From NCBI GenBank assembly GCA_964057225.1, contig OZ059894.1, positions 14,818,001 to 14,882,000 of the forward strand: a stretch of 64,000 nucleotides of DNA. Direction: 5' to 3'. Positions within the stretch are counted from its first letter, which is position 1; every line of letters starts with the position of its first letter. The position numbers and the translations under genes are program-made. Below the pieces are notes generated by a model. It worked only from the letters and a program-made list of their open reading frames with translations, ran no database searches and was not told where the DNA came from. Source of the stretch: Auanema rhodensis. Lineage: Eukaryota > Animalia > Nematoda. This document shows positions 15,181-59,708 of this stretch, in pieces.

Positions 15181-16088
15181 TAGGTGGTCCAAATGGAACG
15201 TGGCCTCCATCAATTTTTTTTCAAAAAAAAAAAAAACAAACAAACAAAAATAAAATTATAAATATATTTAAATGAATACAAAATAATATTTTTAATTAAT
15301 CTCAGCTCATTTGTCTGAAAAGCTTGTTTGACTTTGCTCTCTTTTTATTCGTCTTGTTCGTAATGGATGTAGCTCATATGCACCAGGTCCTCCTTTTTCA
15401 TTTTGAAAATGATGTTTCTGCTAAAGAAACATGTCGCAAGATGAAAGCAGTTCATGGAGAATTCTCTCCAGCTCACAGAAGATGTAAGAAATGGTTTACA
15501 TGCTTCAAACCAGCGAGATGGATCTCGGAGATCGTCACTGGCCCGGTGCCGTTAAGAATTTCAGCGATGACAGCCTTCAGAAGGTTCTCGATGACATTCC
15601 TGGAGCGACCCAACTCCAAATCGTGAAAGAACTGAAGGTTAGCAAATCTGCTGTCTCTTAGAAGCTTAACAAAATGGGTAAAATCCATAAGATTTCACCA
15701 TTTTCCCCACATGTCTTGACTGAGAGCAATATCAGATCGAGAGTTGTTTTGGCTGAGCAGGACCTTCTGTGAATGAGTCAAAAAAGGGTTTTTTTAAGTT
15801 TGGTAACTGGGGACAAGAAGTGGATTCTCTACCTCAACCCAAACATGACTAAGATTTGGGTGTACCCAGGTGAGGAAGTTCCTATGACACATAGGGCTTA
15901 CCCACAAATTCCTAAAAAGCCGCTGCTAACAACGCTTCTGCAATTAGGTTGGGTCGTTTTGAAGAACATTTTTCAGAAAAGAATTAGAAATTTAGAAGAA
16001 AGGTGAAAGAAAGTGATAGAAAATTAGGGAAACTATTTTAGAAAATAAAAACTTTTGCATTGCTACGTTTCAATTAGACGACGATTTA
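15181..16088 (+). mobile_element. Degenerate, internally deleted mariner (Tc1/mariner) element
   Basis: Mos1-like N-terminal HTH from 15363 (MDVAHMHQVLLFHF...CKKWFTCFK), then PHVLT and LVTGDKKWILY (cf. IVTGDEKW), and C-terminal FQKRIRNLEER*KKVIEKLGNYF (cf. GIRKLPERWQKVV..GEYF). Frameshifts and stops are present and the central catalytic region is missing. Imperfect TIRs: TAGGTGGTCCAAATGGAACGTGGC (15181) versus GCTACGTTTCAATTAGACGACGA (about 16062). Confidence 0.85.
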
Positions 16089-17296: not shown

Positions 17297-18772
17297 TTAC
17301 TTATCTGGAATATCTTCCATTGCTATATTATCAAATGACATTATACCTCGAGATCGGTTACAACGTAGATACAGCAATACAACACATACTACAGAAATAA
17401 CTATTAAAGCTATTAGATTTACATTCACCGGTCCTGGACGAATTATGAGCACCCGGCCCATACCGGACATACCGTAATTCAGAAATACGGTACGGCCGTT
17501 AAGTGATGGTACTTCATCAACCAAATATGAAATTGGAATTGGAGCACGACTTCTTGTTGTATACATTATGAATTTATATAACTGAGAATATGATATGACT
17601 ACTGGCTGTATAAGTAATGTCCAGAGAACACCTGTTGAACATGGTGGATGAACGAAAGAACCTGAAAATTTCATTTCCGTATAAACATAACTCGTTGAAA
17701 ATCTTATACCATTATAACGATAGAAGGAAGTATGATCTTTGGGAAGAAGAACTGCTGGCTGAACAAAGTCGTATGGCTCATCCAAGCCGTTTTCTATAAT
17801 AGGATACATGGATTTAGCGGCGGATATGATGACATGATGACTTACTGCTAAACAATGGCTGATCCAATGTGCTCATTTCCTTGTTCTTTTTTGCACGACT
17901 AGTTGTATTGACAGTTAATTCAAAGAAGACAGCAACCTATAAACAGAAAGAGGAAATATCTTACACATATATAATGCATTCAAAGATATGCTTACAATAG
18001 CAACATGTCCAGGCTTATTACGAGCATCTTCTAGTCTGAATCCTTCACGTACATGAACAAAATGAGCCTGAAAACATTCATTTTTTAACAAAACACTACT
18101 AAAAGGGAATGTTTTACCTCCATAAAGTGATAAGCTCCATTAATGGTATGGCCAGATTGAATAGGTGAATGACTACTCCATTCACTAACTGCCCAATGAA
18201 TTTCTTCCAGATAATACTTGTAAGGTAATCCCCCACCAATAATCATTGGACGATTTTGCCATAATCGAAAACCAAAAACAGCTTCTGAATATATGAATAT
18301 ATTAGAATATAGTTGGCAATATATACAAGAAAAACCTGTGAAATTTTCAAATTTTCGTTGTCGTACTAATCCGGTTGAGTTATAATTAATAAATTTTAAA
18401 GGAGAAAATTGAATAGGTACAGCTTTTACTGAAAAACAAAAAAAATGTTATGTATAAATTCAATTTAAGAATGCTTGAAACATACCGACGTCGATGTTAA
18501 CTGGGGAGCGTTCTTGTCCGTCAAAGCAGTCCGGATGGGCATTTTTGATATCAGTTTTCCAATCAGCAAACTCTTTAACAGCATCAAGCAAAGTTTTACC
18601 TATAACGTTTGAGTTGATGAAAAACAAAAATCAAATTGTAAGTCTTACCGATGCTTTTCGAAGTTGTAGCCGAAACTGTCGATGTAGATATCGTAGTGGC
18701 TTTTTGAGTAGAAACATTATTGGATAATTGCAATAAATATATGAGAAAAACTATGAGATAACCACTCGTCAT
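17297..18772 (-). CDS. Alpha-carbonic anhydrase-like protein with signal peptide and C-terminal TM helix, probably non-catalytic
   Basis: Spliced: MTSGYLIVFLIYLLQLSNNVST..., C.GQERSPVNID, IIGGGLPYKYYLEEIHWAV, SGHTING..HFMEAHFVH, VAVFF, LLPKDHTSFYRYNGSFVHPPCSTGVLWTLL, then TM LIALIVISVVCVVLLYL. A further short 3' exon is possible. Confidence 0.85.
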
Positions 18773-20078: not shown

Positions 20079-23000
20079 TTATGATATAGCACCTTTATGT
20101 GTTAAAAATTCCATCAATGTCTCAATTTCTAAATTGATATTAGCTGTTGCTCGTCGAATTCGTTGTGCTATTTCGTCTGTTTCACAATCATCGAAAGAAC
20201 GTCCACAGAATGAAGCAACCATTGCTTGAGCTTGTGCATCCTCACTGAAATCAAATAAACTTGCTAAAGCTATAAATAATTTCAAAATATATATAAATAG
20301 AAGTTTTGGTGCACAAGGTGATTGTAGAGGTATCGTACAAGTTAAGATGTAGAGGGAAAATAAATAGTTGAATAATGCATTAAACAACCGTTCATTAGAT
20401 ACAACATCAACACAAATGACACATTGCTCAGATATTAATTTAAGTTTCACGTGATCTTTAAATGCCACGTGAAATATACGTGAAATATACGTGAACAAAA
20501 TATTTGAATATTTGAACTGTGTGCATATATACATACAAAATAAAAAAAAGTAGAAGAAATAGTCTACATTCACGCATCATGCGCTCAATTAGCAAAGCAA
20601 AAATGAAATGAAAATCCAAAAGATATTTAAAAAATTTAATGTTTATATAGGGTGCATATAGAATAGCTGAAGCGAAAATACCTGGCTACTGACACATGGC
20701 TTCCAGCTTTCTTGCTTTCAGTTGATCCGCGAAGAAGTTTATCACGCAGCTCCAGTAGATCGATGAATGACCGTCGTTTTGAAGGAGTTGATCTAATTTT
20801 GTGAGGAGTAGCCGTCAGGTCCAACTAAAAAAATTGAAAATATATATAAATATGTTATAAATTATATGCTAACCTGTTTCAAAGCATCATTCAAATCTCC
20901 ACATTTCAACCGAAGTTCAGAGAAATGAAGTATTGTATTCTTGACGATTTCATGAATTTCTGCCACCCAGAACTTCATAGACAGACCCAAAGCTCGCCGA
21001 CATTCGTTTATAAATGACTGTGATTGAGCAACAGCCTATGAAAATTAAAAAAATAAAGTTTTTAATAAATATAATAATATACAATACCTTATCCAAATGA
21101 TGATTATTCCATAATTGAAGATAATCTCCTTTATGATCTACATTAGGTGACCAATCCATAATTGCACACCAATCCTTCATTAAAAGTGGTTCAACCTATG
21201 TTTTTCAACTTCAATTTTAAGTTTTAATATTTTTGAATTACCTTGATTCCTGCTTGTAGCATACACAATATTCCTTGTTTTGTGTATAAATCTCCACGAT
21301 TCAGATGTGGATATAAGAATTTGATAGTCATTTTAACATCAACTTTCTTAATTTCTTTTCGAATCTAAAATAAATCTAAAATATAAATAATATAAAATTG
21401 ATTATAACCTTGCTCAGGAGTAAACCAAGAAGCTTTGCACACGATTTGTTGCTTTTACACTCATCAACTACTTCACATTTTGGTTCACAGTCTTGATGAA
21501 AACAGGGAGATTTTGACACAAAAATAGTAATTTCGTATAAATCTATCTGAAAATATAAACATATAAACATAACATTTAAATAATATGTCATACACTATAT
21601 TTGGATATTAAATCAAATAAGGCAACCAAAAGCTGTTCTTCCACATGAGGCTCTGCTTTAGAATCATGAAAGAAATCTCCTCGATAAATATAATCATCAC
21701 CTTAAATAAATATGTTTGTTGTTTAATTTTTATGTATATATATTCAACGTTTACCTATTAATGTTACAATTAAACCGCTGCTTTCATGTTTATGTTCTAA
21801 AAAGCATTGCTGAACATGTTTCGGTATTGAAAATTTGGCTGCCCCATTCGTACAATCGCCACAGCATCGACATCTGGAATGCAAATATTCGTAAAAAATA
21901 TTTTTCAAAAAAAATTAACAGAGGCAATTATAATATTTGATGTAATTTTTCTTTCATATCATATAGTAAGAAGAGAATATTTGTGTTTTTTTTTCGACGA
22001 ATTAGATGGGAACAAGATACTAGATATCTGGGATAATTCGGGTAAGTAAGCATTCGTCGGTGCTAAAAGCTAACAATCGCATAGATAATGGCCTAATTAT
22101 GTGAACAGATCGTCTGGTTAGCCTAATATAAATATGCTTTCCCTCTATTCCTATCGATTTTATATAATTAAAATATAAAATAATATGAATTTCAAAAAAA
22201 TAATTAATAATAATTAAAATCTAAGAACGTACTTGCTTGAGCAAAATTCATAAACAGATCGGCATGGACATTCCTTCTTGACACACATTTTCTTGTTTTT
22301 TGCGCATTGACATCCTTGTTCAGGTTTAGCAACTTTTACTATTTTTTTAGGTGGTTCCTAAATTAATTAAATTAAACAAAATAAAATCCCTAATGTATAT
22401 TAATATAGTAAAGAGAGTGTTATAGAAGGTTTAGCTAAGAAGGTTCTCAAATCAATAAACTATAATTGTTTGATGTCAATTGTGAACAAAAGAAAATAAT
22501 GTACAGATTGCATCCATATAATTTAAAGACAAAATAAGCATATAATTATAAAAATATATAAAATATGAGAAAATAATAAAAAGATGTTGTGTTATTGTTT
22601 AAATATATGAGAACATTTTATAAATATTTGGAAAATAAGTTGAATTTAAGCTCAAACCTTGTTTTTACAAATTTGCTTACAAGCACAAAGCTTGCTACAT
22701 CCTTCCTTCATCTTTAAACAGTCACATCTTTCGTTTTTCATACAAGCATTCTTTGCTGGCTTAGCTGGATCAACTTCACATGAGCATTTACAAATTGCCT
22801 GATTTAAGCAGTCGCCTCGATATCTAAAAATTTAAATTAAAAAGTTTATTTTAATTAAAAGTTAATTTCTCTCTCCCTTTATTACAAGAAACAATTTTTT
22901 TTTCTTTTTAGCTTTTCAAATTCTTTTTCTCTTGAGTTTAATTCCATGTTTTTTGCTGTTTAGCCATTCATTGTTGTTCAGGGGAACAGATATCCTTAAT

Positions 23001-25973
23001 GAATCTCGGAATCCGATCTGATGATGGCTATAACGATATCTAATAATGCTTCTCCTCTTAGTCTCATCCAAGCTTTATCCATATTTCCCTTCGTATTTCA
23101 TCAATTGCTTGATGCGCGCCTCTACGAATGATATTACTTGATGCTATACCAAATCTAGCGACAACAGAGGTTCACGATGCTTGTGCTTCTCAACCTCTTT
23201 CGCTCTCTTTCAACACGTTTGGTTTCAAGTGTCTTTCTAACGTGAATAGAGATATTGATTAAAGATAGAAGAAGGCTTGCATGCAGCTTCATTTGGTCAG
23301 CAACAATACAAGGACATCGAATGTCTGTCATCTATTGACCAGTAGTTAGCTCAGGTCGTCGTATTGTCAAATGCACCCCTCCTCCTAGTAGACTATTTCT
23401 AATTTTCTTTTCTAGTATTTCTTCCACTCAAACTCTTTTCCCTTTTCTTTGAACTGTGTAGTTCAGCATACACGAGAGTGGGGGCTTTTCAAAAGGCATA
23501 CACTTTCCCTTTTACTTATTACTCTCTTAGAGCTTCAACACCAATAGTCAACTACCAGCTACACATGCGTAAGATCCAGTCAACCTCTTCTTTCTCTTCC
23601 TCTTGTTCTCTCTTTTTCCCTCTCTCCTTCTTTCACCCCTCCCCTCTCTTCCTCTATCTATTTCTCATGGTACTATATTTCTCTCTCCCTACCCTTTTCC
23701 ACTCGTTTCTTCTCATTTGGTCTGCCTCTTCTCTCTCTATCTTTTTCATTGTATTATAGTAGAGGCCAGCTGCCAAATGCCTAATTAATGTGTCAATTCA
23801 GCAACCTTTACAGCTTAAGCAGCAAGATTAGTTGAACCACAATTCCATTAATATGTGAGTACTTTATGATCGACCAACTGACAGCTTAATTAGCAATGAT
23901 TTGTAATTAGACAATTCTTAAAACTTGAAAATTGATCAAAAAATGTCGAAAAAAACTGTTAAATGAAAACGTCATTGGGTTTCTTGAAGCAATTAGATAT
24001 GAAAGGACAAAATCTTATAAATTGTCAAAATCATATTACCCAAGAGATTTCAATGATTATTGGATTAACTAAGAGATTAAGCAGACTAGTCAAAGAACAA
24101 GTTTACAAGCTTCTTCTCGACATTATTCAATTGCTTGATGATTTGAAGCTGAACGAGTGTTCTGTCGTTTCCAAGGACGTTTGTTCTTCAAAGATTTAAC
24201 TGAAAACTAAACCATCTGCTGTTTGCTGGATGTATACAAGCTATATAGAGGGAAAAAACGGAAGGATGCCGCTATGCAGTTGACTCATCTTCTCCGGTTT
24301 CTTAGGTCTAAATGGGATTTGGTGGACTATTGGACGTGGTCCGAAAGATGGCTCGTCAGTAGTTCATTAGACGACAACTGACAATAATTCTATTGGCTTC
24401 CTCGCCCCGAAATGTAGAAAAAACGAAAAAGAGTTAGAAGCCGTAGCACGAACTGAAGAAAGCAGAGCGGTGAACCGTTGATATAACATAATCAACGTTG
24501 GTCGTCTCTACGGATTCAACTTCACACCAACAAATATTCCGTTTAACCATATATACTAAACTCTGTAGCCGAGAATCATATTATCGAAGTTTTCGTTCCA
24601 CCTTAATCTTTATCCACTCAAAACGCTAAACTGCTTCTTCCATGATATCTTCTGGGAGAATTAGTACATGAGTGATTACACTAAGAATTTCTTTAATGCC
24701 TCTAACAATTCGGAGAACGAGTATTCAGAGGGCAAACTGAAAGCCGACAGAATGCCAAACGAACAAACAGAAGGACCATGGAACAGCTCGTGTAACTCAC
24801 AGTCTCTCATGTCGTTTGTCATTCTTTGTAGGCTTCTGTCTATTTTGGCTTCATGCCAGATGGGCTGAGTAGTCGAAGAGTTAGAAGCCGAAAAAGACTA
24901 AAATGAGGACGATGAGAAAGATATGCAATCTATAGTTAGAACGTTGAGCCCATGATGCTATAGTAGTTTGAAAAGACAGAAATTAGCATAAAGAGATCGA
25001 ATAGTGGAAGCTGAAGAAACCGAAAAAGGGAAGAAGATGACGATGCGAAGTCAGCAGAAAACATGATTCATGAAGAAGATTCGACCCCGGCAGCTATGGT
25101 GTCCTAAATAGTCCCAAGGGTGCAACCAGAACTTCATTCTTGCTCTCCCTTTCCTTCATATATCCAGTATTTCAATCCTTCAACGCTGTTTTATCTCCTC
25201 GATCACTTCCATAGGCTGCTTTCAAGCCTTGAATTATACTAATAATAGATCGAGGTGTGGAATTTTCAATATATTTTTTGAAGAAAAAGCTAAGAAACAA
25301 AAGTTTGTATTCTTATTTTCAGTCAAAATTAAATAAAGCCAAGGTACTGATTCAACCTTTTTTCCTCGTCTTTAGTTTATTTGATAAAAACTTCCTTCCA
25401 AATCGAGTTGTAGCAGTTTATGGATGCACAGGTTGCCTCTACTATATATACCAGCTCAAACAAAATAAAGAAGGAAAAAGCCCGATGCTTCTGGTTACTG
25501 CTTTTCCTCTTCTCTCGTAAAATTTTAGTTCTCTCTCTCTATCTCTCTCTCTTTCAATCTATTCATTTATGTAGCTATCTCCCTCTCTTTCTCTTCTTTT
25601 ATGCGTCGTCATATCTCTATCTCATTCTCTCCCTCTCTCTCTATTTCGCGCACCCAGTCACCCACTCAACTCCCTCCCTTCTTTGCTTTCTTATCTCTCT
25701 CCATCATTCATACTATTTCTATTACTCGACACATTTTCATTCGCTTAATGAAGCCACTGACCTGGTACTCTCACAATGCTCATCACATGTCTTTCTGGCA
25801 GCTACACATGGACATGTATCAGCACTACATCTAAAAGAATACAAATAGAATAAAATTCTTTGTTTATACTTCAAATTCGAATTTGAAGTTTTCTTGGAGA
25901 AGATGACTAACCTACTCTGACTGACTGCACATTCGCAGCAATAGTTTGTGGCCCGGCTCATTTCGCTGGCCAT
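20079..25973 (-). CDS. CXC-repeat / AID-APOBEC-like zinc-dependent deaminase fusion protein
   Basis: Exons at approximately 25973-25912, 25830-25762, 22823-22658, 22357-22233, 21873-21755, 21700-21594, 21546-21409, 21364-21242, 21195-21088, 21035-20874, 20825-20681 and 20244-20079 join in frame. Three Cys-rich CXC modules end in C-x-N. The deaminase motifs are PHVEEQLL, ITIFVSKSPC...SCAKLL, MTIKFLYPH and QGILCMLQAGIKVEPLLMKDW, followed by a helical C-terminus. Confidence 0.85.
23940..25110 (+). pseudogene. Decayed intronless coding-like sequence of unknown origin inside the 2.9-kb intron of the deaminase gene
   Basis: GC is higher than in normal introns here. Long reading-frame stretches are broken by scattered stops (LLDVYKLYRGKKRKDAAMQLTHLLRFLRSKWDLVDYWTW; MSDYTKNFF...QMG*VVEELEAEKD*NEDDEKD). 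GAGTTAGAAGCCG recurs at about 24431 and 24878. No family recognised. Confidence 0.35.
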
Positions 25974-41754: not shown

Positions 41755-44700
41755 TTAACAGATATTATGACAGTGGTTTGCTTTCAATAATAAAATAGAC
41801 GCGTAGGTTTCTTCTGGACGTTGGTTTTTTCTCTCCTTGGGGCTGTTGTCTGAATGTTGCAAAATGAATACAGGAGAAACATTTAAAATAGTACCATTGT
41901 AGGATTTCGGTTTTTCATCTAATCCGAAATACCAAGAATATAAGTGAGTTCCACGTAAGAATGGCCGAGTTACCTCACAGAATTCTTCGCTTTCAGTGGG
42001 CATTAAAGTCTGAAATTAATATTTATTTGAATATGTAGTGTACACACCTGGCTGAAACAATCCCCAGCTCCATCTAATGAACATAAGTGAACGTTTAATA
42101 TCGTATCTCTTCCAGATATGTTGTATCTAAGAAGCTTGTTGTAGGAGTAAAAACATTTTGAATATAAAACCTGTATCCGAGACATAATGAATAATCATAC
42201 CATATAGGCTCTGATTTGAAATAAGTTAGATTATTGCCTTGCAAAATTATGTGTTTATGCATCGGTGTTTTAACTTTTGGCTTTACCCCAGAATCTTAAT
42301 AATGATATATTTTGTTTTTGCAAAGTATAGCGGAACTTACATCCTGTTTGCTGCTTTTTCTTTGACGATTTTTGTCTTGGAAAACGAATATTATCAGAAT
42401 AATTATAGTGGGAATTCCAATTATTAACGTGTTGCGGTAATCGTTGATCCTCTCTTTTGGACTTTCCATGACGTGCTTCGCATTTTGATTTGCATTCATG
42501 TAATGTCATGAAATTGTTTGCAGATTTTCCACATCCTGTGTAGTGAAATCCTCGACATGCTTTTGATCGCTTGTTGAAATAATATCTATAAAATGAGAAT
42601 TGAAACTTTAGAATATAATAATAAAGTAAATGATGAGCAGAGTTGCATATCATGAAATTTGAAAATAAGTTATTTAAGTTGCATCAAGACACCATTCATG
42701 CATATTTAAGAATTCTAATTTTGGCATGTCTTTGAGAAATACATTTGGCATACATACTAAATAAACGAAGACTTATATATGCTCATTGTTTCAATAAGCT
42801 CTCCAAATTTTGGATTTTCTCTTATAAGGCTTAGGAAGATATTGTTTTCATTTCAGTGTTTTGATCAAACATTTAAGCTACTTAAACTTTACCTGTTCGA
42901 CATGGCTTCACACCAGTTACCACGATCAAGTGATTCCAGACAAGGATCTGAAAATGAATTGTCAGCCAAAACATATTTCAACTTTTTAACCGTTGGATGT
43001 GCTTTTCTATAAATATGATGGTTTATACTTACCTAAACCTGATATTTCACATGTTTTCTGACATTTTTCAAAACTTTCAAATTTGTTAGTGTTACCCCCG
43101 CATCCTGAATGTTTATCATTTAATTATAAAATGTATTTGAATTTCTAAACCTCCATAAAGAAATTGATCACACGTTCCTCTAGTTTCATTAAAAAACCAC
43201 ATATATTCCAATTGATTACATTTTCCCCAATCAGGAGGATGGGAACATATGGCTGGATCGTTACTTGGCTTAATTCCTCGACAAATTTCACTGCATTCCC
43301 ATTCAGTGGCAAATCTGAGGATAAAAGTTGAATTGAATCAAAAAGAAAGTTAACCTATTTTCATTTCCACCACAACCACTATATGTGAATGAAACACATT
43401 TCTTGTTATGGTATGACCATCGTTGAACAGGACGCTTCGTACTACTAGAGCATTTTCCGGAAGATGATCCTGGTTGAGAACAAACTGAAACTTTTTGATA
43501 AACAAAGATCTATTTTCATATATTAATATATGTGCGATATGTGCTACATACCATGACTGTTGGCTCTTGGCTTTCTTTCCAATTTTCTTCGTTCAACTTG
43601 ACAAGTACGTTGACAAACTTCATAAGAATGGAAATTATTGGCATTACCACCACAACCCAAATACCAGAATTGAGAACATTTTCCTAGAAAAAGATGAGAA
43701 ATTGGGAGAAATGTTGATAATTTGTGATTAGGAAATACCATATTCACGATCATAGTAGAATCGATAGCTAGCTTGAGCTAAACAATGATCATCGTTCTTT
43801 CCATAACCAATATGAAGTGGTTGATGACAATCCATCTCAGGTTCTAAAGAGCAAAAGTGGTTTTTTCTAAAAAAATTTGAGAAAATAGTTGAGAAACCTG
43901 TCATATCATTGAATTCGTAACATAATCCTTCACATTGACTTAAGGTCATGAAACGATTTCCATTGCCATCACATCCAGAATAAGCGAAAGGACGACAAAC
44001 TTTGGATGTTTTATCATAATAGAAAGCTGGATATCTGTGAAAAAATAAAATAAAATTGAGGAATAAAGGATTGAAGATCCAACGTTTCTCGACAATTTCC
44101 AATTTCTATTGGTTCTAGACATCGGTACTTGGTTTCTGGATCCGGCAGACGTGATTCAACCGCATAACCTGGATGAACACAATGCCTCTTACAGGATTCT
44201 TCAGAAGGGAATATGTTTTCAGAGTTAGAAACACATCCATCCCACCAGAATGAATTACATTCTCCAGTTTTGGGCTGAAATTTTGAATTACAAGATGGAA
44301 TATCCTCGTAAGACATACCTCGAAATGCCATTTCTCTTGCCATTCTCCATTTCCACATGATTCCTGATACTTTGGATCAAATCTGGCAGCACAATGATCT
44401 GAAAATCAAAATTTAAGTTTCATTTCAATTCGAAACTAAGTCAAGTACTTGGTGTTCTTTCTTCGATATGTCGTTCACAAATCCATTGGCATGTTTCCAA
44501 AGATGGGAAAATATTTTCATTTTCTCCTTTGCAATTACCGTACCTTAAAGGTTTTTCAAATAAAAATTTAAAAAAATTGAGAAGTTTTTCACCAGAACAT
44601 CTGACATCTGTGAGTTGAATGATCAAAGTAATAGAATTGTTGGAACCGGCCCGTTGCACTACAGGAATCCTTGTATGAGTCATCAAATGGTTGGATACAA

Positions 44701-47700
44701 GCTTCTGAAAAGACTTGTCTGATGTTCAACTTAACCACCCTCTGAGCTTACGAGTGAGTTCTCTTGGTGGACGTTCGCAGACTTCTTCGCATTCTCCAGA
44801 ATCTGTGAAGAAATTCAAACTGGGAGATCGACATCCACCCCAATGGAATGCAACACAACGTTTTCTTAAAAGTAGAAGTAGAGGTTTGCAAAATAAAAAA
44901 AAATAAAAAAATACTTCTCATGATCGAAGTAAAATCTGGTGGAAAACTCGCCCAAACGACAATCCCCGAGGTATACTGTATCAAACTTTTCCAAACAACC
45001 TCCTAAAGATATGAAAACTTTGAAAAGAATTGTATTCCAGTATCATACTTCCTTTAACTTCTGGATGTTTTCCAGCACATTTCCATAAACAACTTTCAAT
45101 ATCATCAAAATTATTTCTTGAAGTACTGAAACATCCATCATTCCAATACATTTTGCATTGTCTTGTATCCGGGTCATAGTAAAATCTGAGATTTTTAGAA
45201 CTTTCTTGATTAATATCTTGATGTTACCGATTTTTCCATAAATGACCTCCAGAACAAGATTTTTCTAAATTTTTATCAAAACGTTCCAAACATTCAGCTG
45301 CAATTACATGAATAGTTTAAGTTACTACATATAGATACCGTAATCCTAAAGTACAGTATACCATGATATGATACAGTATACTGTACCTTAGTGATACGGA
45401 TAGGCACACGAAAGCAGAAAGAAGAAAGCTTTACCTGCATATTCGGATACAGTAATGACGATTGTAAGAAGCTAAAGCATATTTTCCATTCATTACCAAA
45501 TGGGTGAAAGGGGGAACGTCTCCAGAATTCATTTAAAGTGATCGTCATTCAAAGTAATCCAAATAATGAATAAAAATACAAATAAACAAAGAGATGTTGA
45601 GAAGTTTTATTCGAAAAACAGATTTCTGAGAAACAACTTGATTGAGCATTACATAAATTGCAAGACGTTCCCCTTTTCAGACAATATAATATCGAGAAAT
45701 TCTTTAAGAAATCTTCAGGATTATTTACAGAATTTGCAAAACATAATTTGAACGTTTCATAGAAAAGTGCAAAATGGCAGGTTTTGTTGTCAAAAACTTC
45801 AACCCATATTCATAAATCAAAGCAAACACAGCATGAAAATGCTCTCCCTTTTGAAAAAAAAATAAAAATTTGGAAAAATTAACAAAGGATCACTCTTTCT
45901 TCGGGGTAATTCCTAAAAATATCAACTCTGCGCTAGAAGATCTGCGAAGAAAGAGTGAAGGAGCTATGGAATCGACTGGAAAACAACCAAAAAGTTCAGA
46001 AAAAATAGAAAAACTAGAAAAAACAAAGCTTAGAGCAACAAAAAGCGGAATATTACGAAGAAAAACGTACAAGCTACTGTGACTGGATGGTCAACAGCCT
46101 TACTGTATGCCAAGTCTGCGCGATTCTCTTCAGCTCTTTGAATGGATGCCATCTGACGGCTCAGATCAGCTTGGAAAGCATGTTGAGCTACAAGGTTCTT
46201 ATGCTCTAGATCTTTGGCTGTCATCGTCGTTGTTGAGACCTGGTCAATACCAGTTGAAGGCTGTTCTTCTACTGCCACATCAGATTGTTCGTCTTTTGTT
46301 CCAACTACGTCTTCTGAAGCGGGTTGACGTGTACGTCGAATACCTTTCTGATAGTGTGTTTCAGTCATTCGAACTTGAAGACCTTTGATGTGAAACTTCT
46401 TCTGCTGAGCACGTGGCTGACGCAACGTACTGGACTCAGAAGAAGCAGAGGACTGTGATTGTGTGAGAGGAAGTGCATGATGTGGTGCAAAGGAAGAAGA
46501 ATCAGATACTTCACGTGAACTATCACGCCGTGTATGATGATGATGATGGTGATTATGTGAATGAGAGCTGTGATGGTGATGGTGATGATGTTGATGCCGA
46601 TGATGATTTAAAGAATTTGAATTGCGGGGAACGTCAGAGTAAGAAACAGAAAATGAACTACGAGAATCTGGCATTAAAACTATGCTCGTACCACTATTTT
46701 CAGAATTTGTCTTCATCTTGTGTCCACATTTCTCCATACATTCCTGAAAGTTACAGCGTTATAACGGCCAGTTATCAGTGAAATCTCTACCTGCTGATCT
46801 TTCCATAAGTTTCGGTTTGATGTTAAGCATCCACCCCACCAGAATCTAGGCAAAAATCGTTTTTACATGTTTTAGAGGGAAAGTTTTACTTTTTACATCC
46901 TTTCTTCTTACTGTCATAGTAAGAACGAACTTTCCAGTCATCATTTGAACAATCTTCATCCCATTTCTCATCATATCCATCATCACAGAAATCTTCTGAA
47001 GTCGATTTATTATAGAAATCAAAGAAGGTTATTGAACTTGATTCAAAGTTTGTCTTCAAATTTTCAGATGAAAACTGCTGATGTTCTTCGAGTTGTGGTG
47101 TTTCATTGACATGGTTGGATGTTGCCTGATCTGGTTCTGATTTTGGCTTCTCCAGAAGATCTGGTGATATATCATAATACTTGACTGGATGATCTGTTGG
47201 AAGAACATGAACTTGTTCATGCTCTTCATCCGAAAAGGTATGTTGAGATTCGGACGGAACTTCTGGATCAGTTATAGCCCTCTCATGGTCACTTTGAACA
47301 GATACTGTGGTGGTTACGACGGCTCCAGGAACATGTATTTGTTGTTCCCCAACAGGGTACTTATGAGCACAAGCAGTTTTACAAGACTAAAATAAAACTT
47401 TAAAGTTGCAGCCCAAGTTTTGAAACTAACATAGACAGTTGAAAAGAAATTTCGAGCATCAGAGTCACATCCGCCATACCAAAACGACTTACAAGCACCT
47501 TTATCTGTATTGAAGTACCATCGAATAACCTACAAGATTGAACTAAGTTATTAAGAAAATGAGAAAGCCTACCCAATTCTCATTCGAACAATCTTCTTCC
47601 AGACGTGGATGAAGTGGTTCTTCACATAGATCAGCTAACTTTCCAAGTTCATTCAAAGTTTTTACAACTTTTGTCTTTTCTTTTGTGATAAAGTCTGGTT

Positions 47701-48121
47701 CTGGTGTAGTCGGAAGATCTTTTGAAGTGGAGTAGATATCGTTGGAATCTCGACGGTGAGAATAGTGCGAACGATGCCGATGAGTTGTAGCTATATTGGA
47801 ATCTGTTGTAGTAGCTTCTTCGAATACTGAAGGAGGCAAGGTAAAGAGAGGTCGACGAGGACTTGCAGAAGGCTTCAACACAAATGTTGGTTGCTCTTCA
47901 GAACTTGAAGATGGTGAACCGTTGGGTAATGACATTAACTTCTTTTTAAATTCCAACATATACTGCTCACGATTAAAGGTGGACAGAGGAGTTGATTTGG
48001 TTGCAAAAGTGCTAGGATCCATTCTGGGTCCAGGGGCAAGTCGAACATGAGTTGGAAGAGTAATTATCTTAACGAAGGGTGTAGTTTCAACAACTTTTTG
48101 TGAAGAAGGCGTTATCGCCTG

Positions 48122-48152
<31 letters not shown>

Positions 48153-50985
48153 GATGTTGATGTTGTTGTTGCTTCTGTTTCTGTTATTTCAGTCATTGTC
48201 GTTGCCGTCTGTGAGGTTGTTGGACTCTCTGGAGCTCTTGATGGTACAGAAGGAAGTTCAAATGTATCTGTAAAACAGAGAATGAAATGTTTGAGTTTTG
48301 AAAAGAAACTTACTCTTCATTTGAGATTCAACTTGTTCAATTCCAGCCGATGAGGAAAGGCTATTGACCTTCTTCCTCATTTTTCGAATTTTCTTTGGTT
48401 GTTCCTCTTCATCAATTGGGATATCTTCCAAAGGATGACGATACACTGGTGGAGCCGTAACCTCTTCGTATTCAACATCTTCCTCAACTTCTTGTTTGAT
48501 TTCGGTGTCAGTTCCTTTGTTAATTGCAAGATTTCTTTGTAAATTCATTGTAAGTTCTCTTTGTTCTTCAGATTCTGACACAATAGGTGTTGAAACTTCG
48601 GTTGGTGATTGTGTAGTTTGAGGTGCTACCTCAAATGTCTTCAATAATTTGTATTTTTCATGAAGATCTGCAAGAGGATGTCGTTCCTCAATCTGGGCAG
48701 ATTCTAGAATTCGTTGGCCTTCTTCTTCGATTGAAGGATGGAAAGAAGGCAATTCCAAGGTTTTCTTTGGAGGTGAACGATCTTTCATGGGCTCGGATGA
48801 ATCAACATCTTCGTGGCATGTCTTCTGACATACCTCTAACGATTCGAAAAAGTTTTTACCAGCAGTATCACGAGCATCACATGATGTATCATACCAAAAT
48901 GGTTCACATTCCTAAATTTGGACAAGTATCAGCTATTCGTATAGGAATAAGAAGAGTCTTACTCTCTTCTCATAATTCCAATAAAATTTCTCATCCCATT
49001 CAGCAGACACACATTCAAGACGAAGGACTTCATCAAAATCACGAAGACAAGTATCTTTAATTATAATGTTTATGAAATTCTATGTATATACTCTTTATCT
49101 TACTATCATTTGGGTTAACTTCTTGCATTATTTTTACTATTTTATCAGCTTCTGTCTTTTGTTGTTGTGTTGAAAGTGTTGTTGTTTGAATATCCTCACT
49201 TATTTCCAAATTTAATTTCATTGGATATGGAGTTATAACTTCGTTCTAGGGTATCTTCGATTGTAACTTAGGGGATGATATGAATCTAACACCTGTGCAA
49301 CTATATTTCCAAATGATAAAACCTTCAAAGCTTCACGTGGAACACTGGCACATAGATCGTCACAAGTCTGCAAATGAGTGGATTTAGGACTGAGAGAGAA
49401 AAAGAAATGTTTACTTGAATATCAGAAAAGATGTTCCTTGAAGTAGATTTGCATCCTCCGTAGAAAAACTGCTTACATCGCATGGATTCATGATCGAAAT
49501 AGTATCTGAATATGATATTCTTTTCACAAAAGTTTTAGAAGAATTCCGAAACCTGATCAGTTGTTCTCCGTTATTGCAATCTTCTTCAGTCAGATTGATG
49601 TCAAAAACGTCGGTGCAAGCATCTGAAGTATGTTACTGAAGTTGTTTCAGGGTTCTGACGACGCATACCTTTGGTAATCTGGCATTCGCCATTATCAGTG
49701 AACCCAGAATCACAATCACATCGATGTGATCCAATGGTATTGACACATCTTGAGTTTTGGGGACAGATGTTCTCGGAATCGCATTCATTAATATCTTTAA
49801 AGGAAATGCTATAAACTGGCAGAAGCACATGATGTAGTAGTTAATGGCTACTTTTATGTTTTCTGATTTTCAACCTAATTTATTAATTATTCTGATTTTC
49901 TTAATTCTTCTTTAAAAATCTAGTACTATTTGAAAACGAAGTTGAGAATATGGAAACAGATAAAGGAAGTTATGATAGAATAGGAAGAACCTGAACATGA
50001 CCATGCATTTCAGATGATATCAACGTCTTTCGAAATGCATGACCACGATCTGTCATGAAGCATCAAAGTGAATTTCATCCTAGTTTACATCTTTCATTTG
50101 TTTCCTTTTTCATTAAGAAAAGCATTTTCATGTTTCAAAATGAAAAATATTCTTTGTGAAGTCTTCAGAAGCTAATTACTTTTTAAATTCCAAAAGCTTA
50201 CCTATACATATACGTCCAAGTTTCTTAAAACCGGGTATACATCCGCAGTCTCCTGCTTCCGCGCAGATTCCATAGATGGGGTCACAATGAGGGCATTCAC
50301 GTATTGAAGGTGTGATCTGAAAGAACAACACCATAACAACAAGTGTTTTCATGTTGACTGACCTTAGTCTTACTAATCATCTGAATAGGTCTTGTAGAAG
50401 CTGGAGGAGCCCGGATAGTTGAGGTGGTTGTCGGTTTCATCGTTGTCGCCTTTGTTGTCGCTGCTGTTGTGGAAGTGAGGGGAGCCGTGGTTACAGTTCG
50501 TCGGTGCTTAGACTCCTGGACCTTTACATCTAATATTTTGCTACAACTAAAGCTCTTTCTTACCTTTGCCAAGTTTAAAGCCATTTCGGCTTTGTCTTTT
50601 TTCTGAACGCATCTGCTTCTACAATGTGTTCTTCGCATAAATCTATTCGAATTACCTCCACATCCACTGAAATTAAACATCTTATAAGGAAAAAAAGAAA
50701 AAAAACTTACGAAAAAATGAATCGTTTACATTCATCAGATTTGGGATCATAATAATAGCGAATAAGTTCTTTAGTACATCCTCCGACATCAGGCGGAAGC
50801 TGGAAAAACTATCGTAACCCAATCAAAAAATGTGAACTCACGTGGCATAGATCAACCGAAGCTTTTAAAGAAACATCGCTGAGTATAGAAGATGGAACTG
50901 ATCTAGTATTAGGTGAATACCAAGCAAGATCATTGATAGAATCTACTATCAACGGTAGAGATATGAGGGTTAAAACCCGAATCAT
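41755..50985 (-). CDS. mec-1: Full-length secreted EGF + multi-Kunitz extracellular matrix protein, MEC-1-like
   Basis: Signal peptide ([16 protein letters not shown]), one Kunitz, EGF, calcium-binding EGF (DINEC...[12 protein letters not shown]), then 13 more Kunitz domains by my count with Thr-, Glu- and His-rich linkers and a unique C-terminus. This order matches the architecture I recall for C. elegans MEC-1. An intronic CATCTGAAATGCAT touch-neuron motif supports the call. Orthology was not tested. Confidence 0.75.
50003..50016 (-). promoter_or_regulatory. Candidate UNC-86/MEC-3 binding site (CATnnnAAATGCAT), left copy
   Basis: CATCTGAAATGCAT in gene orientation, in the enlarged intron between the two EGF exons, with a second inverted AAATGCAT about 20 bp away. 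Confidence 0.55.
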
Positions 50986-52248
50986 CTGAAATATTACGGT
51001 GCAATGAAAACATAATTTAGGAACAATCGTGAGAAAAAAATAATAAAAATAATAAGAATTATTTGAGTTAATTTAAAGTACGATAATCTTAAAAAAATCT
51101 GTCGGTAATTCATTTTCTGAGAAAAACAGACGTCAGACAGCTAAAGGGTCACATAGGGGCACGCACAGGTCATCTCTCCCTGATTCATCTTTGTGAGGTC
51201 GTAAACTTCTCGAAATAAGCTTAGATCGAAAAGACTGAATTCTCAGAATAGCTACTGACTGAGCGTTCTGAAGAACTGTGCTTTTGCGAGGCAGAATCTC
51301 ATCACATATGCATACAGCCTGTCCTTTTCCTACTTAAAGATAATGCCTCATACTCTAACCCTCCCATTGCCTCTCTTCATCATCATAGCATTCAATTCAT
51401 CCAAAACCCTATTGCTATCTCTTCAGGGCAGCTGACGACTGTCCTCTACTTTCCAGTTGTTATTTTATTCTTTTTATAATTATTCATCTTACAACCCTTT
51501 CTGTCAAGTATCTTTATGGTGTTGATGAACGTCATCATGTACTCCAGCTCAATGATTTTTTAAGTACTTTTTATGACATAAGTAAGTACAGAATAAGTAA
51601 AAATAATAGAAAAAAGATTAATTTTTGAGAAAAATTAAATATTTCTAATTGTTTCCAGTCTCACAATTTCGATCAACTAATCAATTTTAATCAACAATAT
51701 AAATACAAAATCTTCTCTTCGGATCAAAAATTAACTTCATTTGAAAGGATATAAGATGAAAAGACAAGAGAAAACAACTGGAAAGTAGAGGACAGTCGTC
51801 AGCTGCCCTGAAGAGATAGCAATAGGGTTTTGGATGAATTGAATGCTATGATGATGAAGAGAGGCAATGGGAGGGTTAGAGTATGAGGCATTATCTTTAA
51901 GTAGGAAAAGGACAGGCTGTATGCATATGTGATGAGATTCTGCCTCGCAAAAGCACAGTTCTTCAGAACGCTCAGTCAGTAGCTATTCTGAGAATTCAGT
52001 CTTTTCGATCTAAGCTTATTTCGAGAAGTTTACGACCTCACAAAGATGAATCAGGGAGAGATGACCTGTGCGTGCCCCTATGTGACCCTTTAGCTGTCTG
52101 ACGTCTGTTTTTCTCAGAAAATGAATTACCGACAGATTTTTTTAAGATTATCGTACTTTAAATTAACTCAAATAATTCTTATTATTTTTATTATTTTTTT
52201 CTCACGATTGTTCCTAAATTATGTTTTCATTGCACCGTAATATTTCAG

Positions 52249-55081: not shown

Positions 55082-55112
<31 letters not shown>

Positions 55113-58100: not shown

Positions 58101-59708
58101 TGTTTCAGTACTTCAAGAAATAATTTTGATGATATTGAAAGTTGTTTATGGAAATGTGCTGGAAAACATCCAGAAGTTAAAGGAAGTATGATACTGGAAT
58201 ACAATTCTTTTCAAAGTTTTCATATCTTTAGGAGGTTGTTTGGAAAAGTTTGATACAGTATACCTCGGGGATTGTCGTTTGGGCGAGTTTTCCACCAGAT
58301 TTTACTTCGATCATGAGAAGTATTTTTTTATTTTTTTTTATTTTGCAAACCGCTACTTCTACTTTTAAGAAAACGTTGTGTTGCATTCCATTGGGGTGGA
58401 TGTCGATCTCCCAGTTTGAATTTCTTCACAGATTCTGGAGAATGCGAAGAAGTCTGCGAACGTCCACCAAGAGAACTCACTCGTAAGCTCAGAGGGTGGT
58501 TAAGTTGAACATCAGACAAGTCTTTTCAGAAGCTTGTATCCAACCATTTGATGACTCATACAAGGATTCCTGTAGTGCAACGGGCCGGTTCCAACAATTC
58601 TATTACTTTGATCATTCAACTCACAGATGTCAGATGTTCTGGTGAAAAACTTCTCAATTTTTTTAAATTTTTATTTGAAAAACCTTTAAGGTACGGTAAT
58701 TGCAAAGGAGAAAATGAAAATATTTTCCCATCTTTGGAAACATGCCAATGGATTTGTGAACGACATATCGAAGAAAGAACACCAAGTACTTGACTTAGTT
58801 TCGAATTGAAATGAAACTTAAATTTTGATTTTCAGATCATTGTGCTGCCAGATTTGATCCAAAGTATCAGGAATCATGTGGAAATGGAGAATGGCAAGAG
58901 AAATGGCATTTCGAGGTATGTCTTACGAGGATATTCCATCTTGTAATTCAAAATTTCAGCCCAAAACTGGAGAATGTAATTCATTCTGGTGGGATGGATG
59001 TGTTTCTAACTCTGAAAACATATTCCCTTCTGAAGAATCCTGTAAGAGGCATTGTGTTCATCCAGGTTATGCGGTTGAATCACGTCTGCCGGATCCAGAA
59101 ACCAAGTACCGATGTCTAGAACCAATAGAAATTGGAAATTGTCGAGAAACGTTGGATCTTCAATCCTTTATTCCTCAATTTTATTTTATTTTTTCACAGA
59201 TATCCAGCTTTCTATTATGATAAAACATCCAAAGTTTGTCGTCCTTTCGCTTATTCTGGATGTGATGGCAATGGAAATCGTTTCATGACCTTAAGTCAAT
59301 GTGAAGGATTATGTTACGAATTCAATGATATGACAGGTTTCTCAACTATTTTCTCAAATTTTTTTAGAAAAAACCACTTTTGCTCTTTAGAACCTGAGAT
59401 GGATTGTCATCAACCACTTCATATTGGTTATGGAAAGAACGATGATCATTGTTTAGCTCAAGCTAGCTATCGATTCTACTATGATCGTGAATATGGTATT
59501 TCCTAATCACAAATTATCAACATTTCTCCCAATTTCTCATCTTTTTCTAGGAAAATGTTCTCAATTCTGGTATTTGGGTTGTGGTGGTAATGCCAATAAT
59601 TTCCATTCTTATGAAGTTTGTCAACGTACTTGTCAAGTTGAACGAAGAAAATTGGAAAGAAAGCCAAGAGCCAACAGTCATGGTATCAATCATTCCGATA
59701 TCATATAG
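52249..59708 (+). CDS. 3'-truncated duplicate of the MEC-1-like gene (signal peptide, 2 EGF, 11 Kunitz; partial gene or pseudogene)
   Basis: Near-identical to the left copy up to the splice donor after ...KPRANSH. It then reads into unrelated DNA (GINHSDII-stop at 59708) and lacks the last three Kunitz domains and the C-terminus. Confidence 0.8.
53218..53231 (+). promoter_or_regulatory. Candidate UNC-86/MEC-3 binding site (CATnnnAAATGCAT), right copy
   Basis: Mirror of 50003-50016, with ATGCATTT at 53194-53201. Confidence 0.55.

What the first reader, a model, noticed from the sequence alone, without database searches (positions are those of the whole stretch)
20079..25973. Nematode AID/APOBEC-like deaminase with three N-terminal CXC zinc modules: candidate DNA-targeted editing or mutator enzyme
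Seen: the gene is fragmented in the ORF track but splices cleanly over 12 exons. It has an intact H-x-E (HVE, 21639-21647), S-P-C (21502-21510) and a later C-A-x-L-L. Further AID/APOBEC hallmarks follow: ITIFVSKSPC (cf. ITWYLSWSPC) and GILCMLQAGIKVEPLLMKDW (cf. AID [20 protein letters not shown]). Upstream are three modules of pattern CxC..C..CxC..C..CxC..CxN; the first is split by a 2.9-kb intron and lacks one Cys. Known: tesmin/LIN-54/MSL2-type CXC domains bind DNA, and AID/APOBEC enzymes deaminate C to U in polynucleotides. I recall CXC-fused APOBEC-like proteins being predicted computationally in nematodes (C. elegans ZK287.1), and I know of no established substrate; this recollection needs checking. 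Inference: a naturally DNA- or chromatin-tethered base-editor-like enzyme, possibly for antiviral or anti-transposon defence.
Basis: partly seen in the sequence, partly recalled or inferred. Interest (0 to 1): 0.88.

Follow-up and report, generated by a model that had tools for sequence, protein, structure and literature searches.

The report
Roundworm CXC-APOBEC-like deaminase gene (ZK287.1 orthologue)
This is a real, transcribed 12-exon gene for the roundworm-wide protein that joins three zinc "CXC" modules to an AID/APOBEC-type cytosine deaminase; the family was described by computer analysis in 2011, it is extremely conserved rather than fast-evolving, and what it edits is still unknown.

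Summary
A 12-exon minus-strand model (20079-25973, all GT-AG, 495 aa) is 99% identical, without gaps, to an annotated Auanema sp. JU1783 protein. It is 88.7% identical over its full length to C. elegans ZK287.1. Spliced contigs from four public runs (one study) reproduce all 11 junctions, including the 2,938-nt intron that separates CXC exons 1-2 from the rest.

The deaminase domain passes Pfam APOBEC_N. Its predicted structure matches only AID/APOBEC structures (Z 15-17). H-V-E-E, S-P-C and the distal Cys are near-invariant. The three Cys modules are homologous repeats with the tesmin/LIN54 nine-Cys pattern. They miss the Pfam threshold and lack LIN54's DNA-reading tyrosines.

This exact architecture was published for ZK287.1 (Iyer 2011), and the clade was revisited by Krishnan 2018, so it is already known. 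The scan had not noted it before on other DNA.

The defence/mutator reading is not favoured. The named hits are essentially one gene per species, spread across all major nematode lineages. Identity is 73-89% in Chromadorea, and dN/dS is about 0.006 against a congener with saturated synonymous sites. The substrate loop is invariant.

My reading is a conserved endogenous polynucleotide cytosine deaminase, or an APOBEC2-like regulator. The substrate is untested.

The parts
20079..25973 (-). Whole coding span of the gene. It has 12 exons: 25973-25912, 25830-25762, 22823-22658, 22357-22233, 21873-21755, 21700-21594, 21546-21409, 21364-21242, 21195-21088, 21035-20874, 20824-20682 and 20244-20079. 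The product is 495 aa.
   Evidence: model, all GT-AG. (99% identical, gapless, to P0071). (all 11 junctions in RNA-derived contigs).
22802..25940 (-). CXC module 1 (residues 12-51). It has eight patterned Cys plus C12 and ends in C-L-N. It is split by intron 1 (81 nt) and intron 2 (2,938 nt).
   Evidence: hhalign against module 3 gives E 1.6e-5.
22661..22792 (-). CXC module 2 (residues 55-98), with nine or more Cys, ending in C-K-N.
   Evidence: hhalign against module 3 gives E 1.8e-7.
21846..22312 (-). CXC module 3 (residues 115-150). Its pattern is CxC-x6-C-x4-CxC-x6-C-x3-CxC-x3-C-x-N. It spans intron 4.
   Evidence: Weak Pfam TCR hit (10.7 bits; cut-off 23.5). The only PDB sequence hit is LIN54 5FD3, with all Cys aligned.
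20988..21821 (-). AID/APOBEC-fold deaminase domain (residues about 159-355, exons 5-10).
   Evidence: Pfam APOBEC_N 97.8 bits on the 99%-identical P0071. Colinear partial hits on window exons 7-9. Foldseek and VIA matches are to APOBEC3A/B/G, AID and APOBEC1 only, with Z 15-17.
21636..21647 (-). H199-V-E201-E202: the zinc ligand His and the catalytic Glu (the HxEE motif of the nematode clade).
   Evidence: for coordinates. Near-invariant in 30 sequences. HxEE is named as the clade signature in PMC3239186.
21439..21510 (-). S229-P-C231 ... C252: the two zinc-ligand Cys. They are separated by a 20-residue insert with conserved H233, C236, C240 and C246, a probable second zinc site.
   Evidence: The insert between the two Cys is described for the nematode clade in PMC3239186 and PMC5889660.
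21272..21298 (-). R285-G-D-L-Y-T-K-Q-G293, at the junction of strand 4 and helix 4 (loop 7 position). It is invariant, or nearly so, in both nematode paralogue clades.
   Evidence: invariant R285 G286 D287 L288 Y289 T290. (secondary structure).
20082..20987 (-). Conserved C-terminal extension (residues 356-495). It has long helices at 365-393, 442-453 and 460-492 around a disordered but conserved linker. The linker carries L-D-L-T-A-T-P-H-K-I-R-S-T-P-S-K-R-R-S-F (TPSKRRSF at 20788-20765).
   Evidence: No Pfam, PDB-sequence or Atlas match.
20682..20693 (-). Alternative 5' splice site that removes 12 nt, which is the four residues S-V-A-S.
   Evidence: Joint 20244|20694 in run X3. The same four residues are missing in the Auanema isoform P0067 and in C. 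elegans ZK287.1b P0072.
23729..23910 (.). Conserved non-coding block inside intron 2, a candidate enhancer. It is 93.5% identical to the Auanema sp. JU1783 intron and is rich in TAAT cores.
   Evidence: No Rfam hit and no folding signal. No contigs laid there.

Best explanation
The locus is the orthologue, in an Auanema-like rhabditid nematode, of C. elegans ZK287.1. ZK287.1 is the founding member of the nematode clade of classical AID/APOBEC-like deaminases. Shown here: the gene is transcribed and spliced as one mRNA, and its protein has four parts. (i) Three tandem, mutually homologous Cys-rich modules of the tesmin/LIN54 CXC pattern, about 9 Cys each, presumably three Zn per module. (ii) An APOBEC-fold deaminase with an intact H-x-E / P-C...C zinc centre and a conserved Cys/His-rich insert between the two Cys ligands. 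(iii) A conserved helical C-terminal extension. (iv) A conserved basic Ser/Thr-rich linker with a conserved 4-residue alternative splice. Inferred: the enzyme hydrolytically deaminates cytosine in a single-stranded polynucleotide, with E201 as proton shuttle and H199, C231 and C252 holding the catalytic zinc. The CXC array and the active-site insert would choose the target. The whole protein, including the loop-7 position, is held almost constant across Nematoda, so I read it as acting on a fixed, endogenous target. That would be a conserved editing or marking function in the manner of AID, APOBEC1, APOBEC2 or APOBEC4, not an arms-race restriction factor. Whether the substrate is DNA or RNA cannot be decided from sequence. 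Identity and architecture: confidence about 0.95. Catalytically active polynucleotide C-deaminase: about 0.65. Endogenous conserved target rather than defence: about 0.7. DNA rather than RNA: about even.
For: - Gene model and transcripts.
- Orthology to ZK287.1: 88.7% identity, colinear over the full length. ZK287.1 sits in the same 90% cluster as Auanema, Necator and Haemonchus.
- APOBEC membership: Pfam APOBEC_N 97.8 bits against a cut-off of 25. All top 50 Foldseek and all top 50 VIA matches are AID/APOBEC chains, with Z 15-17, rmsd 2.4-3.0 A and 165-180 of about 185 residues aligned.
- Catalytic residues and clade signatures are conserved: HxEE, the insert, E305 in strand 5, L/M at its end, D311-W312 and W332 (against the list in PMC3239186).
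- Repeat homology of the CXC modules. The only PDB sequence hit is LIN54, with the nine Cys and the terminal Asn aligned.
- Constraint: 73-89% identity across Chromadorea and 58-60% to Trichuris and Trichinella. dN/dS is about 0.006 with pS 0.72 against Auanema sp. JU1783. All named hits among 51 are nematodes, essentially one per species, plus a second clade in Dorylaimia only.
- Krishnan 2018 reports low entropy for nematode AADs.
Against: - No biochemical or genetic data exist for any member. Only three papers in the library mention ZK287.1, and none is functional.
- APOBEC2 and APOBEC4 keep the same catalytic residues without demonstrated deaminase activity, so conservation of H-x-E and P-C..C does not prove catalysis.
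- The CXC modules fail Pfam's TCR threshold (10.7-13.8 bits against 23.5). They lack the LIN54 tyrosines, whose replacement even by Arg abolishes DNA binding, so DNA binding is not established.
- A profile of the family finds no APOBEC in PDB by sequence alone. The link to solved APOBECs therefore rests on Pfam and on a predicted structure (mean pLDDT 74.8).
- Strong conservation does not by itself exclude a defence role; AID is both conserved and immune.
Confidence: 0.6

Rival explanations
1. Non-catalytic, or only vestigially catalytic, chromatin or transcription regulator in the manner of vertebrate APOBEC2. The CXC array and the deaminase fold would bind DNA or chromatin at specific sites, and the conserved C-terminal helices would recruit partners. 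The zinc centre would be kept for structure.
For: APOBEC2 has intact catalytic residues, no established substrate, and acts on chromatin as a transcriptional repressor (PMC11047093 and its preprint). Like APOBEC2 and APOBEC4, the nematode clade is slow-evolving with a single conserved copy. The CXC pattern is that of chromatin proteins. In the full-length prediction, CXC modules 1-2 are more confident (pLDDT 77-85) than when folded alone (40-65). That hints they pack on the rest of the protein.
Against: The proton-shuttle Glu, both Cys, the His and the extra E202 are near-invariant across both paralogue clades over the whole phylum. So is the loop at the substrate-selecting position. This is more than structural zinc binding would need.
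Confidence: 0.2
2. One reading: a DNA-tethered mutator used for defence against viruses or transposons, like APOBEC3.
For: Iyer et al. 2011 proposed a defensive or mutagenic role, and noted that the N-terminal DNA-binding module favours DNA mutagenesis. The closest structural matches include the ssDNA mutators APOBEC3A/B/G and AID.
Against: No lineage-specific expansion; the named hits show essentially one orthologue per species. dN/dS is about 0.006. The loop-7 segment is invariant. Krishnan 2018 explicitly excepts the nematode clade from the positively selected, Vif-like-targeted AADs. Structural similarity does not separate DNA from RNA editors, since APOBEC1 also matches at Z 15.8.
Confidence: 0.15
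3. A metabolic (free cytidine or dCMP) deaminase or a tRNA (TadA/ADAT-like) deaminase that merely resembles APOBEC.
For: All of these share the same deaminase superfold and the H/C-x-E ... P-C-x-x-C zinc centre.
Against: All top 50 structural matches in both rankings are AID/APOBEC chains that cover nearly the whole target, including the two extra C-terminal helices. The APOBEC_N score is far above its cut-off. The AID/APOBEC-specific features listed by Iyer 2011 are all present.
Confidence: 0.03

Closest known systems
C. elegans ZK287.1 (UniProt Q23460 / J7S127), the nematode clade of classical AID/APOBEC-like deaminases (Iyer et al. 2011 NAR, PMC3239186; Krishnan et al. 2018 PNAS, PMC5889660)
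   Same: It is the orthologue: 88.7% identical and colinear over 495/497 residues. It has the same eight CxC motifs arranged as three modules, the same HxEE, the same Cys-rich insert between the zinc Cys, the same C-terminal region, and the same S-V-A-S alternative splice. The intron positions after residues 21 and 44 are shared.
   Different: Only species-level differences. Intron 2 is 2.9 kb here and about 0.33 kb in C. elegans. It carries blocks conserved within Auanema that were not detected in C. elegans or Necator.
Vertebrate AID/APOBEC enzymes (APOBEC3A/B/G, AID, APOBEC1; e.g. PDB 5SWW, 5K83, 5W1C, 6X91)
   Same: The deaminase fold, including the two extra C-terminal helices (Z 15-17, rmsd about 2.5 A). 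The H-x-E and S-x-S-P-C ... C zinc centre.
   Different: Only 15-25% identity. No sequence-level PDB hit. A 20-residue Cys/His insert between the two Cys ligands, where vertebrates have 2-4 residues. Lys instead of Trp in the S-W-S position. N-terminal CXC array and a 140-residue C-terminal extension. Extremely slow evolution, unlike APOBEC3 and APOBEC1.
Tesmin/TSO1 CXC (CRC) domains of LIN54, and the MSL2 CXC domain (PDB 5FD3; PMC4974476, PMC4248295)
   Same: The nine-Cys spacing CxC..C..CxC..C..CxC..C-x-N and the fold-stabilising terminal Asn. Arranged as tandem modules. LIN54 is the only PDB sequence hit of the N-terminal profile. UniProt labels the orthologues 'CRC domain-containing protein'.
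   Different: Below Pfam's TCR gathering score. Three modules rather than two. Module 1 has eight Cys. The minor-groove tyrosines (Y536 and Y610 of LIN54) are Thr, Arg and Glu here. LIN54 loses DNA binding when they are changed to Ala, Phe or Arg, so CHR-type recognition is not expected.
Second nematode paralogue clade in Dorylaimia (Trichinella T10_12284, Trichuris suis D918_01640, Soboliphyme A0A183IJ21, Romanomermis A0A915IVA3)
   Same: The same CXC-plus-deaminase architecture, aligned colinearly. The R-G-D-L-Y-T loop and the zinc ligands are invariant.
   Different: About 32% identity. Longer and divergent C-terminal regions. Found only in clade I nematodes. The window gene belongs to the conserved main clade.

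Membership tests
AID/APOBEC-like deaminases (Pfam APOBEC_N, PF08210) | Score above Pfam's gathering cut-off (25 bits) | tested here: met
   97.8 bits on P0071, which differs from the window protein at 5 of 495 residues. Window exons 7, 8 and 9 scanned alone hit profile positions 66-91, 91-127 and 128-160 colinearly, with 23.8, 16.6 and 16.1 bits.
AID/APOBEC-like deaminases | Zinc centre H-x-E ... P-C-(x)n-C with the catalytic Glu | tested here: met
   H199, E201, P230-C231 and C252 are present in the window and near-invariant or invariant in 30 sequences.
AID/APOBEC-like deaminases | APOBEC fold with two additional helices after strand 5, closer to AID/APOBEC than to CDA, dCMP or TadA deaminases | tested here: met
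   All top 50 Foldseek and top 50 VIA matches are AID/APOBEC chains, with Z 15-17 and model residues 147-355 covering 165-180 of about 185 target residues. This rests on a predicted model (pLDDT 82-94 in most of the domain, about 70 in the insert and near residue 320).
AID/APOBEC-like deaminases | Cytosine deamination in single-stranded DNA or RNA | not testable with these tools
   Needs biochemistry. No published assay was found for any nematode member.
Nematode ZK287.1 clade (Iyer 2011, Table 1) | HxEE in helix 2. Insert within the Cys pair. E in strand 5 and L/M at its end. D-aromatic in the first extra helix and W in the second. N-terminal eight CxC motifs. | tested here: met
   H-V-E-E 199-202. 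A 20-residue insert at 232-251. V-E305-P-L-L-M. D311-W312. W332. Eight CxC pairs, as 3+3+2 in three modules.
Vertebrate NAD1 (PF18778) and APOBEC2 (PF18772) subfamilies | Score above the gathering cut-off | tested here: not met
   NAD1 23.9 bits against 27. APOBEC2 23.3 bits against 26.8. It is not a member of these vertebrate subfamilies.
Tesmin/TSO1 CXC (Pfam TCR, PF03638; PROSITE CRC) | Score above Pfam's gathering cut-off (23.5 bits) | tested here: not met
   13.8 bits on exon 2. 10.7 bits on module 3. UniProt's 'CRC domain' label is a source annotation that I could not re-run.
Tesmin/TSO1 CXC | Nine Cys in CxC-C-CxC-C-CxC-C spacing, followed by a conserved Asn, coordinating three Zn | tested here: met
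   The pattern is met in modules 2 and 3, and with eight Cys in module 1. All of these Cys, plus N51, N98 and N150, are invariant or near-invariant and align to both LIN54 repeats. Zinc binding itself was not tested.
Tesmin/TSO1 CXC | Minor-groove tyrosine before the second CxC (LIN54 Y536 and Y610), required for CHR DNA binding | tested here: not met
   The aligned positions are Glu (module 3), Arg (module 2) and Thr (module 1). LIN54 with Y to A, F or R does not bind DNA.

The most novel reading that the evidence does not exclude
The nematode CXC-APOBEC is a site-specific endogenous editor, an invertebrate counterpart of AID or APOBEC1. Its DNA or RNA target has been fixed since the nematode ancestor. 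Targeting would come from the triple CXC array together with the zinc insert in the active-site loop. This would explain dN/dS of about 0.006, the invariant loop-7 segment shared by two ancient paralogues, and a conserved 4-residue splice switch. If the target is DNA, it would be a programmed, phylum-wide use of cytosine deamination in an animal genome outside vertebrate immunity.
Probability: 0.3. Interest if true: 0.75.

Novelty: already known. Interest (0 to 1): 0.35.

Why it matters
The gene itself adds nothing new to the catalogue. The family, its architecture and even its unusual conservation are in print, and the orthologue in a sister species is annotated.

What remains open, and is directly testable in C. 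elegans, is the function. A catalytically intact AID/APOBEC-type enzyme is kept almost unchanged in every nematode lineage examined, with no known substrate. If it edits a defined DNA or RNA target, it would be the first endogenous APOBEC-type editing system outside vertebrates. It would also be a natural example of a deaminase fused to a nucleic-acid-targeting zinc array.

The constraint measured here argues against the usual 'defence mutator' assumption. Experiments should look for a conserved endogenous target.

Tried and rejected
1. Sequence-only link to solved structures. A profile of 30 family members found no APOBEC chain in PDB at E <= 1, only insignificant TetR hits on the C-terminal helices. 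The link had to come from Pfam and fold comparison.

2. Folding the CXC region alone gave a poor model (mean pLDDT 52.9). I therefore did not fold-search it. Whether the modules adopt the LIN54/MSL2 CXC fold remains untested structurally.

3. The C-terminal 140 residues and the CXC region gave nothing in Pfam or the ESM Atlas feature search.

4. A nested gene or ncRNA in the 2.9-kb intron was rejected for now. There is no Rfam hit at gathering score or at E <= 0.1. There is no tandem or dispersed repeat within the window. The ORF at 23963-24196 has no Pfam hit. There is no folding z-score on either strand. No RNA contigs were laid there.

5. Upstream alternative first exons like those of the long C. 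briggsae isoforms were not found by tblastn in the window.

6. Relatives outside Nematoda. The exon-7 phmmer search of 1.84 billion representatives and two word-index searches returned only nematode-named proteins or unnamed Logan, JGI and ENA proteins. The word index and the length filter limit this search, so it does not prove absence.

Full report
**1. What is in the sequence**

On the minus strand between 25973 and 20079, twelve segments join through canonical GT..AG introns into a 1,488-nt open frame of 495 codons. The exons are 25973-25912, 25830-25762, 22823-22658, 22357-22233, 21873-21755, 21700-21594, 21546-21409, 21364-21242, 21195-21088, 21035-20874, 20824-20682 and 20244-20079.

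The window is AT-rich (31% G+C).

**2. Independent support for the model**

A phmmer search with exon 7 alone against 1.84 billion representatives found 20 proteins. These seeded the later searches.

The spliced model is 490/495 identical, without a gap, to P0071, an annotated 495-residue protein of Auanema sp. JU1783. The window is therefore from an Auanema-like rhabditid.

The orthologous locus L001 has the same 12 exons, with identical exon lengths.

**3. Transcript evidence**

Four public runs of one study hold 22-24% of the sampled words of the 5,895-nt stretch. That matches the exonic share of 25%.

Their contigs are 100% identical to the window and contain all eleven junctions exactly as modelled. 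The joint 22823|25762, which skips 2,938 nt, is present in all four runs. The joint 25830|25912 is present in two.

The runs are only guessed to be RNA, and they are contigs. They show that the joined form exists but say nothing about its level. Contigs of 1.2-2.0 kb that lack all introns are nevertheless best explained as mRNA. The CXC exons are therefore joined to the deaminase exons.

One run also shows a second donor (joint 20244|20694) that shortens exon 11 by 12 nt. This removes S-V-A-S. The same four residues distinguish the two Auanema isoforms (P0071 and P0067) and the C. elegans isoforms ZK287.1a and ZK287.1b.

**4. Identity of the gene**

- The model is 88.7% identical to C. elegans ZK287.1a (P0060, NP_505492.1, Q23460) over the full length.
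- ZK287.1 lies in one 90%-identity cluster with proteins of other Caenorhabditis species, Auanema, Necator, Haemonchus and Cylicocyclus.
- Two database searches returned 40 and 51 proteins. Every hit that carries a name is from a nematode.
- The hits cover Rhabditina, Tylenchina, Spirurina and Dorylaimia.
- There is essentially one orthologue per species; Diploscapter pachys has two hits.
- A second clade, about 32% identical and with the same architecture, occurs only in Trichinella, Trichuris, Soboliphyme and Romanomermis.

**5. Prior literature**

Iyer et al. 2011 (PMC3239186) describe 'Novel AID/APOBEC-like C. elegans ZK287.1'. The description lists HxEE in helix 2, an insert within the Cys pair, E in strand 5, and L/M at the end of strand 5. 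[quoted passage not shown] They suggest DNA mutagenesis.

Krishnan et al. 2018 (PMC5889660) keep a nematode-specific classical AAD clade. They note the loop-5 insert between the cysteines. They list the nematode AADs among the few clades that do not show high entropy or positive selection.

The other two papers that mention ZK287.1 only list it in tables or gene lists. Two further searches found no functional study.

**6. The deaminase domain**

- Pfam APOBEC_N scores 97.8 bits on P0071 against a cut-off of 25. The vertebrate subfamily models NAD1 and APOBEC2 stay just below their cut-offs.
- Window exons 7-9, scanned separately, hit consecutive stretches of the APOBEC_N profile.
- A family profile does not reach any solved APOBEC by sequence.
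- An AlphaFold2 model of P0071, built from a 30-sequence alignment, has mean pLDDT 74.8 and pTM 0.71, with pLDDT 82-94 in most of the domain and about 70 in the insert and near residue 320.
- Foldseek's first 50 matches are all AID/APOBEC chains.
- VIA-align gives Z 15-17, rmsd 2.4-3.0 A and 165-180 aligned residues out of about 185. The matches are APOBEC3A, APOBEC3B, APOBEC3G, AID and APOBEC1, and nothing else appears in the first 50.
- In the 30-sequence alignment, H199, E201, E202, S229, P230, C231 and C252 are invariant or near-invariant.
- So are H233, C236, C240 and C246 in the 20-residue insert, a plausible second zinc site.
- So is the segment R285-G-D-L-Y-T290 at the loop-7 position. 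This segment is invariant even between the two paralogue clades.

**7. The N-terminal modules**

The cysteines fall into three units: C13..N51, C55..N98 and C115..N150. Their pattern is CxC-C-CxC-C-CxC-C-x-N. The first unit has eight patterned Cys.

Profile-profile comparison confirms that the units are homologous: E 1.8e-7 and E 1.6e-5.

The only PDB sequence that the N-terminal profile touches at E <= 10 is LIN54 (5FD3). Both of its CXC repeats align Cys for Cys to module 3. That score is not significant, and Pfam's TCR model stays below threshold.

LIN54 reads DNA through one tyrosine per repeat, and changing it to Ala, Phe or Arg abolishes binding (PMC4974476). The aligned residues here are Glu, Arg and Thr. 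The modules are therefore CXC-like zinc clusters by pattern. LIN54-type DNA recognition is not expected, and DNA binding of any kind remains an inference.

Folded alone, the region gave a poor model, so no fold search was made. In the full-length model, modules 1-2 are more confident. This weakly suggests that they pack on the rest of the protein.

**8. The C-terminal 140 residues**

This part is as conserved as the catalytic domain. It consists of long helices around a disordered but conserved linker. The linker carries T-P-S-K-R-R-S-F, a basic Ser/Thr motif that looks like a kinase or localisation signal; that reading is my inference. No family or structure match was found.

**9. Evolutionary constraint**

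- Identity to the window protein is 87-89% in Caenorhabditis and strongylids and 83-86% in Pristionchus, Strongyloides and Bursaphelenchus.
- It is 73-81% in Meloidogyne, filariae, Anisakis and Gnathostoma.
- It is 58-60% in Trichuris and Trichinella and 49% in Soboliphyme.
- Against Auanema sp. JU1783, synonymous sites are saturated (pS 0.72). Only five residues differ, which gives dN/dS of about 0.006 by Nei-Gojobori.
- Together with low copy number and the invariant substrate loop, this is the signature of a fixed, probably endogenous function. It is not the signature of a host-parasite arms race.

**10. Mechanism and rivals**

The best-supported reading is a zinc-dependent polynucleotide cytosine deaminase aimed at a conserved endogenous target. 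The CXC array and the active-site insert would do the targeting. Whether the substrate is DNA or RNA is undecided.

The main rival is an APOBEC2-like regulator that binds chromatin without editing (PMC11047093).

The defence-mutator reading is possible but disfavoured.

A metabolic or tRNA deaminase is effectively excluded by the fold ranking and the clade signatures.

**11. Surroundings and side observations**

Intron 2 is long in Auanema (2,938 and 2,847 nt) and in Necator (about 4.4 kb), and short in C. elegans (about 0.33 kb). Its position after residue 44 is conserved.

Although synonymous sites are saturated, four intronic blocks still align between the two Auanema-like species. The best is 23910-23729, 93.5% identical over 184 nt. 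That is better than the coding exons, which are 84% identical. The block is dense in TAAT cores.

There is no Rfam hit, no folding signal and no contigs laid there. I read it as a candidate intronic enhancer. It was not detectable in the C. elegans or Necator loci.

**12. Verdict**

The feature is already known from computational work, and its biochemical function is still open. Interest is moderate to low as a discovery. It remains a good experimental question.

Noticed in passing
window 23729-23910 (also 24253-24404, 24799-25141, 23220-23561), inside intron 2: Blocks that align to the orthologous intron of Auanema sp. JU1783 although synonymous sites are saturated. The best block is 93.5% identical over 184 nt and is dense in TAAT/ATTA cores. 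There is no Rfam hit, no folding signal and no RNA contigs. It was not found in the C. elegans or Necator loci. Candidate intronic enhancer.
   Followed up: partly
window 20682-20693 (minus strand): An alternative 5' splice site removes 12 nt, which is S-V-A-S. It is seen in one run. The same difference separates isoforms in Auanema sp. JU1783 and in C. elegans ZK287.1a/b, so this micro-variation is conserved.
   Followed up: yes
window 20218-20711: Low-depth contigs (about 4-7, against 30-50 for the exons) cover intron 11. This could be retained intron, pre-mRNA or DNA carry-over.
   Followed up: no
window 15324-15623 (+): An ORF with a Mos1-type transposase HTH domain (Pfam HTH_48, 38.5 bits). 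Probably a mariner-family transposon remnant.
   Followed up: partly
window 17300-17809 (-): An ORF matching the C-terminal part of eukaryotic-type carbonic anhydrase (Pfam Carb_anhydrase, 38.2 bits), followed by a hydrophobic stretch. Likely an exon of a membrane-anchored CA-like gene.
   Followed up: partly
L002 and L003 (C. elegans and Necator loci): In both species a sulfate-permease gene (Sulfate_transp + STAS) lies just downstream on the opposite strand. I did not check whether this synteny holds in the window.
   Followed up: no
proteins P0034, P0083, P0084 (Trichinella): The Trichinella orthologues are annotated as fusions with short/branched-chain acyl-CoA dehydrogenase. This is probably a gene-model merger of neighbouring genes, not a real fusion.
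   Followed up: no
window 43548-59686: An earlier first-reader note reports a 16-kb near-perfect palindrome duplicating a mec-1-like gene in this window. I did not examine it.
   Followed up: no
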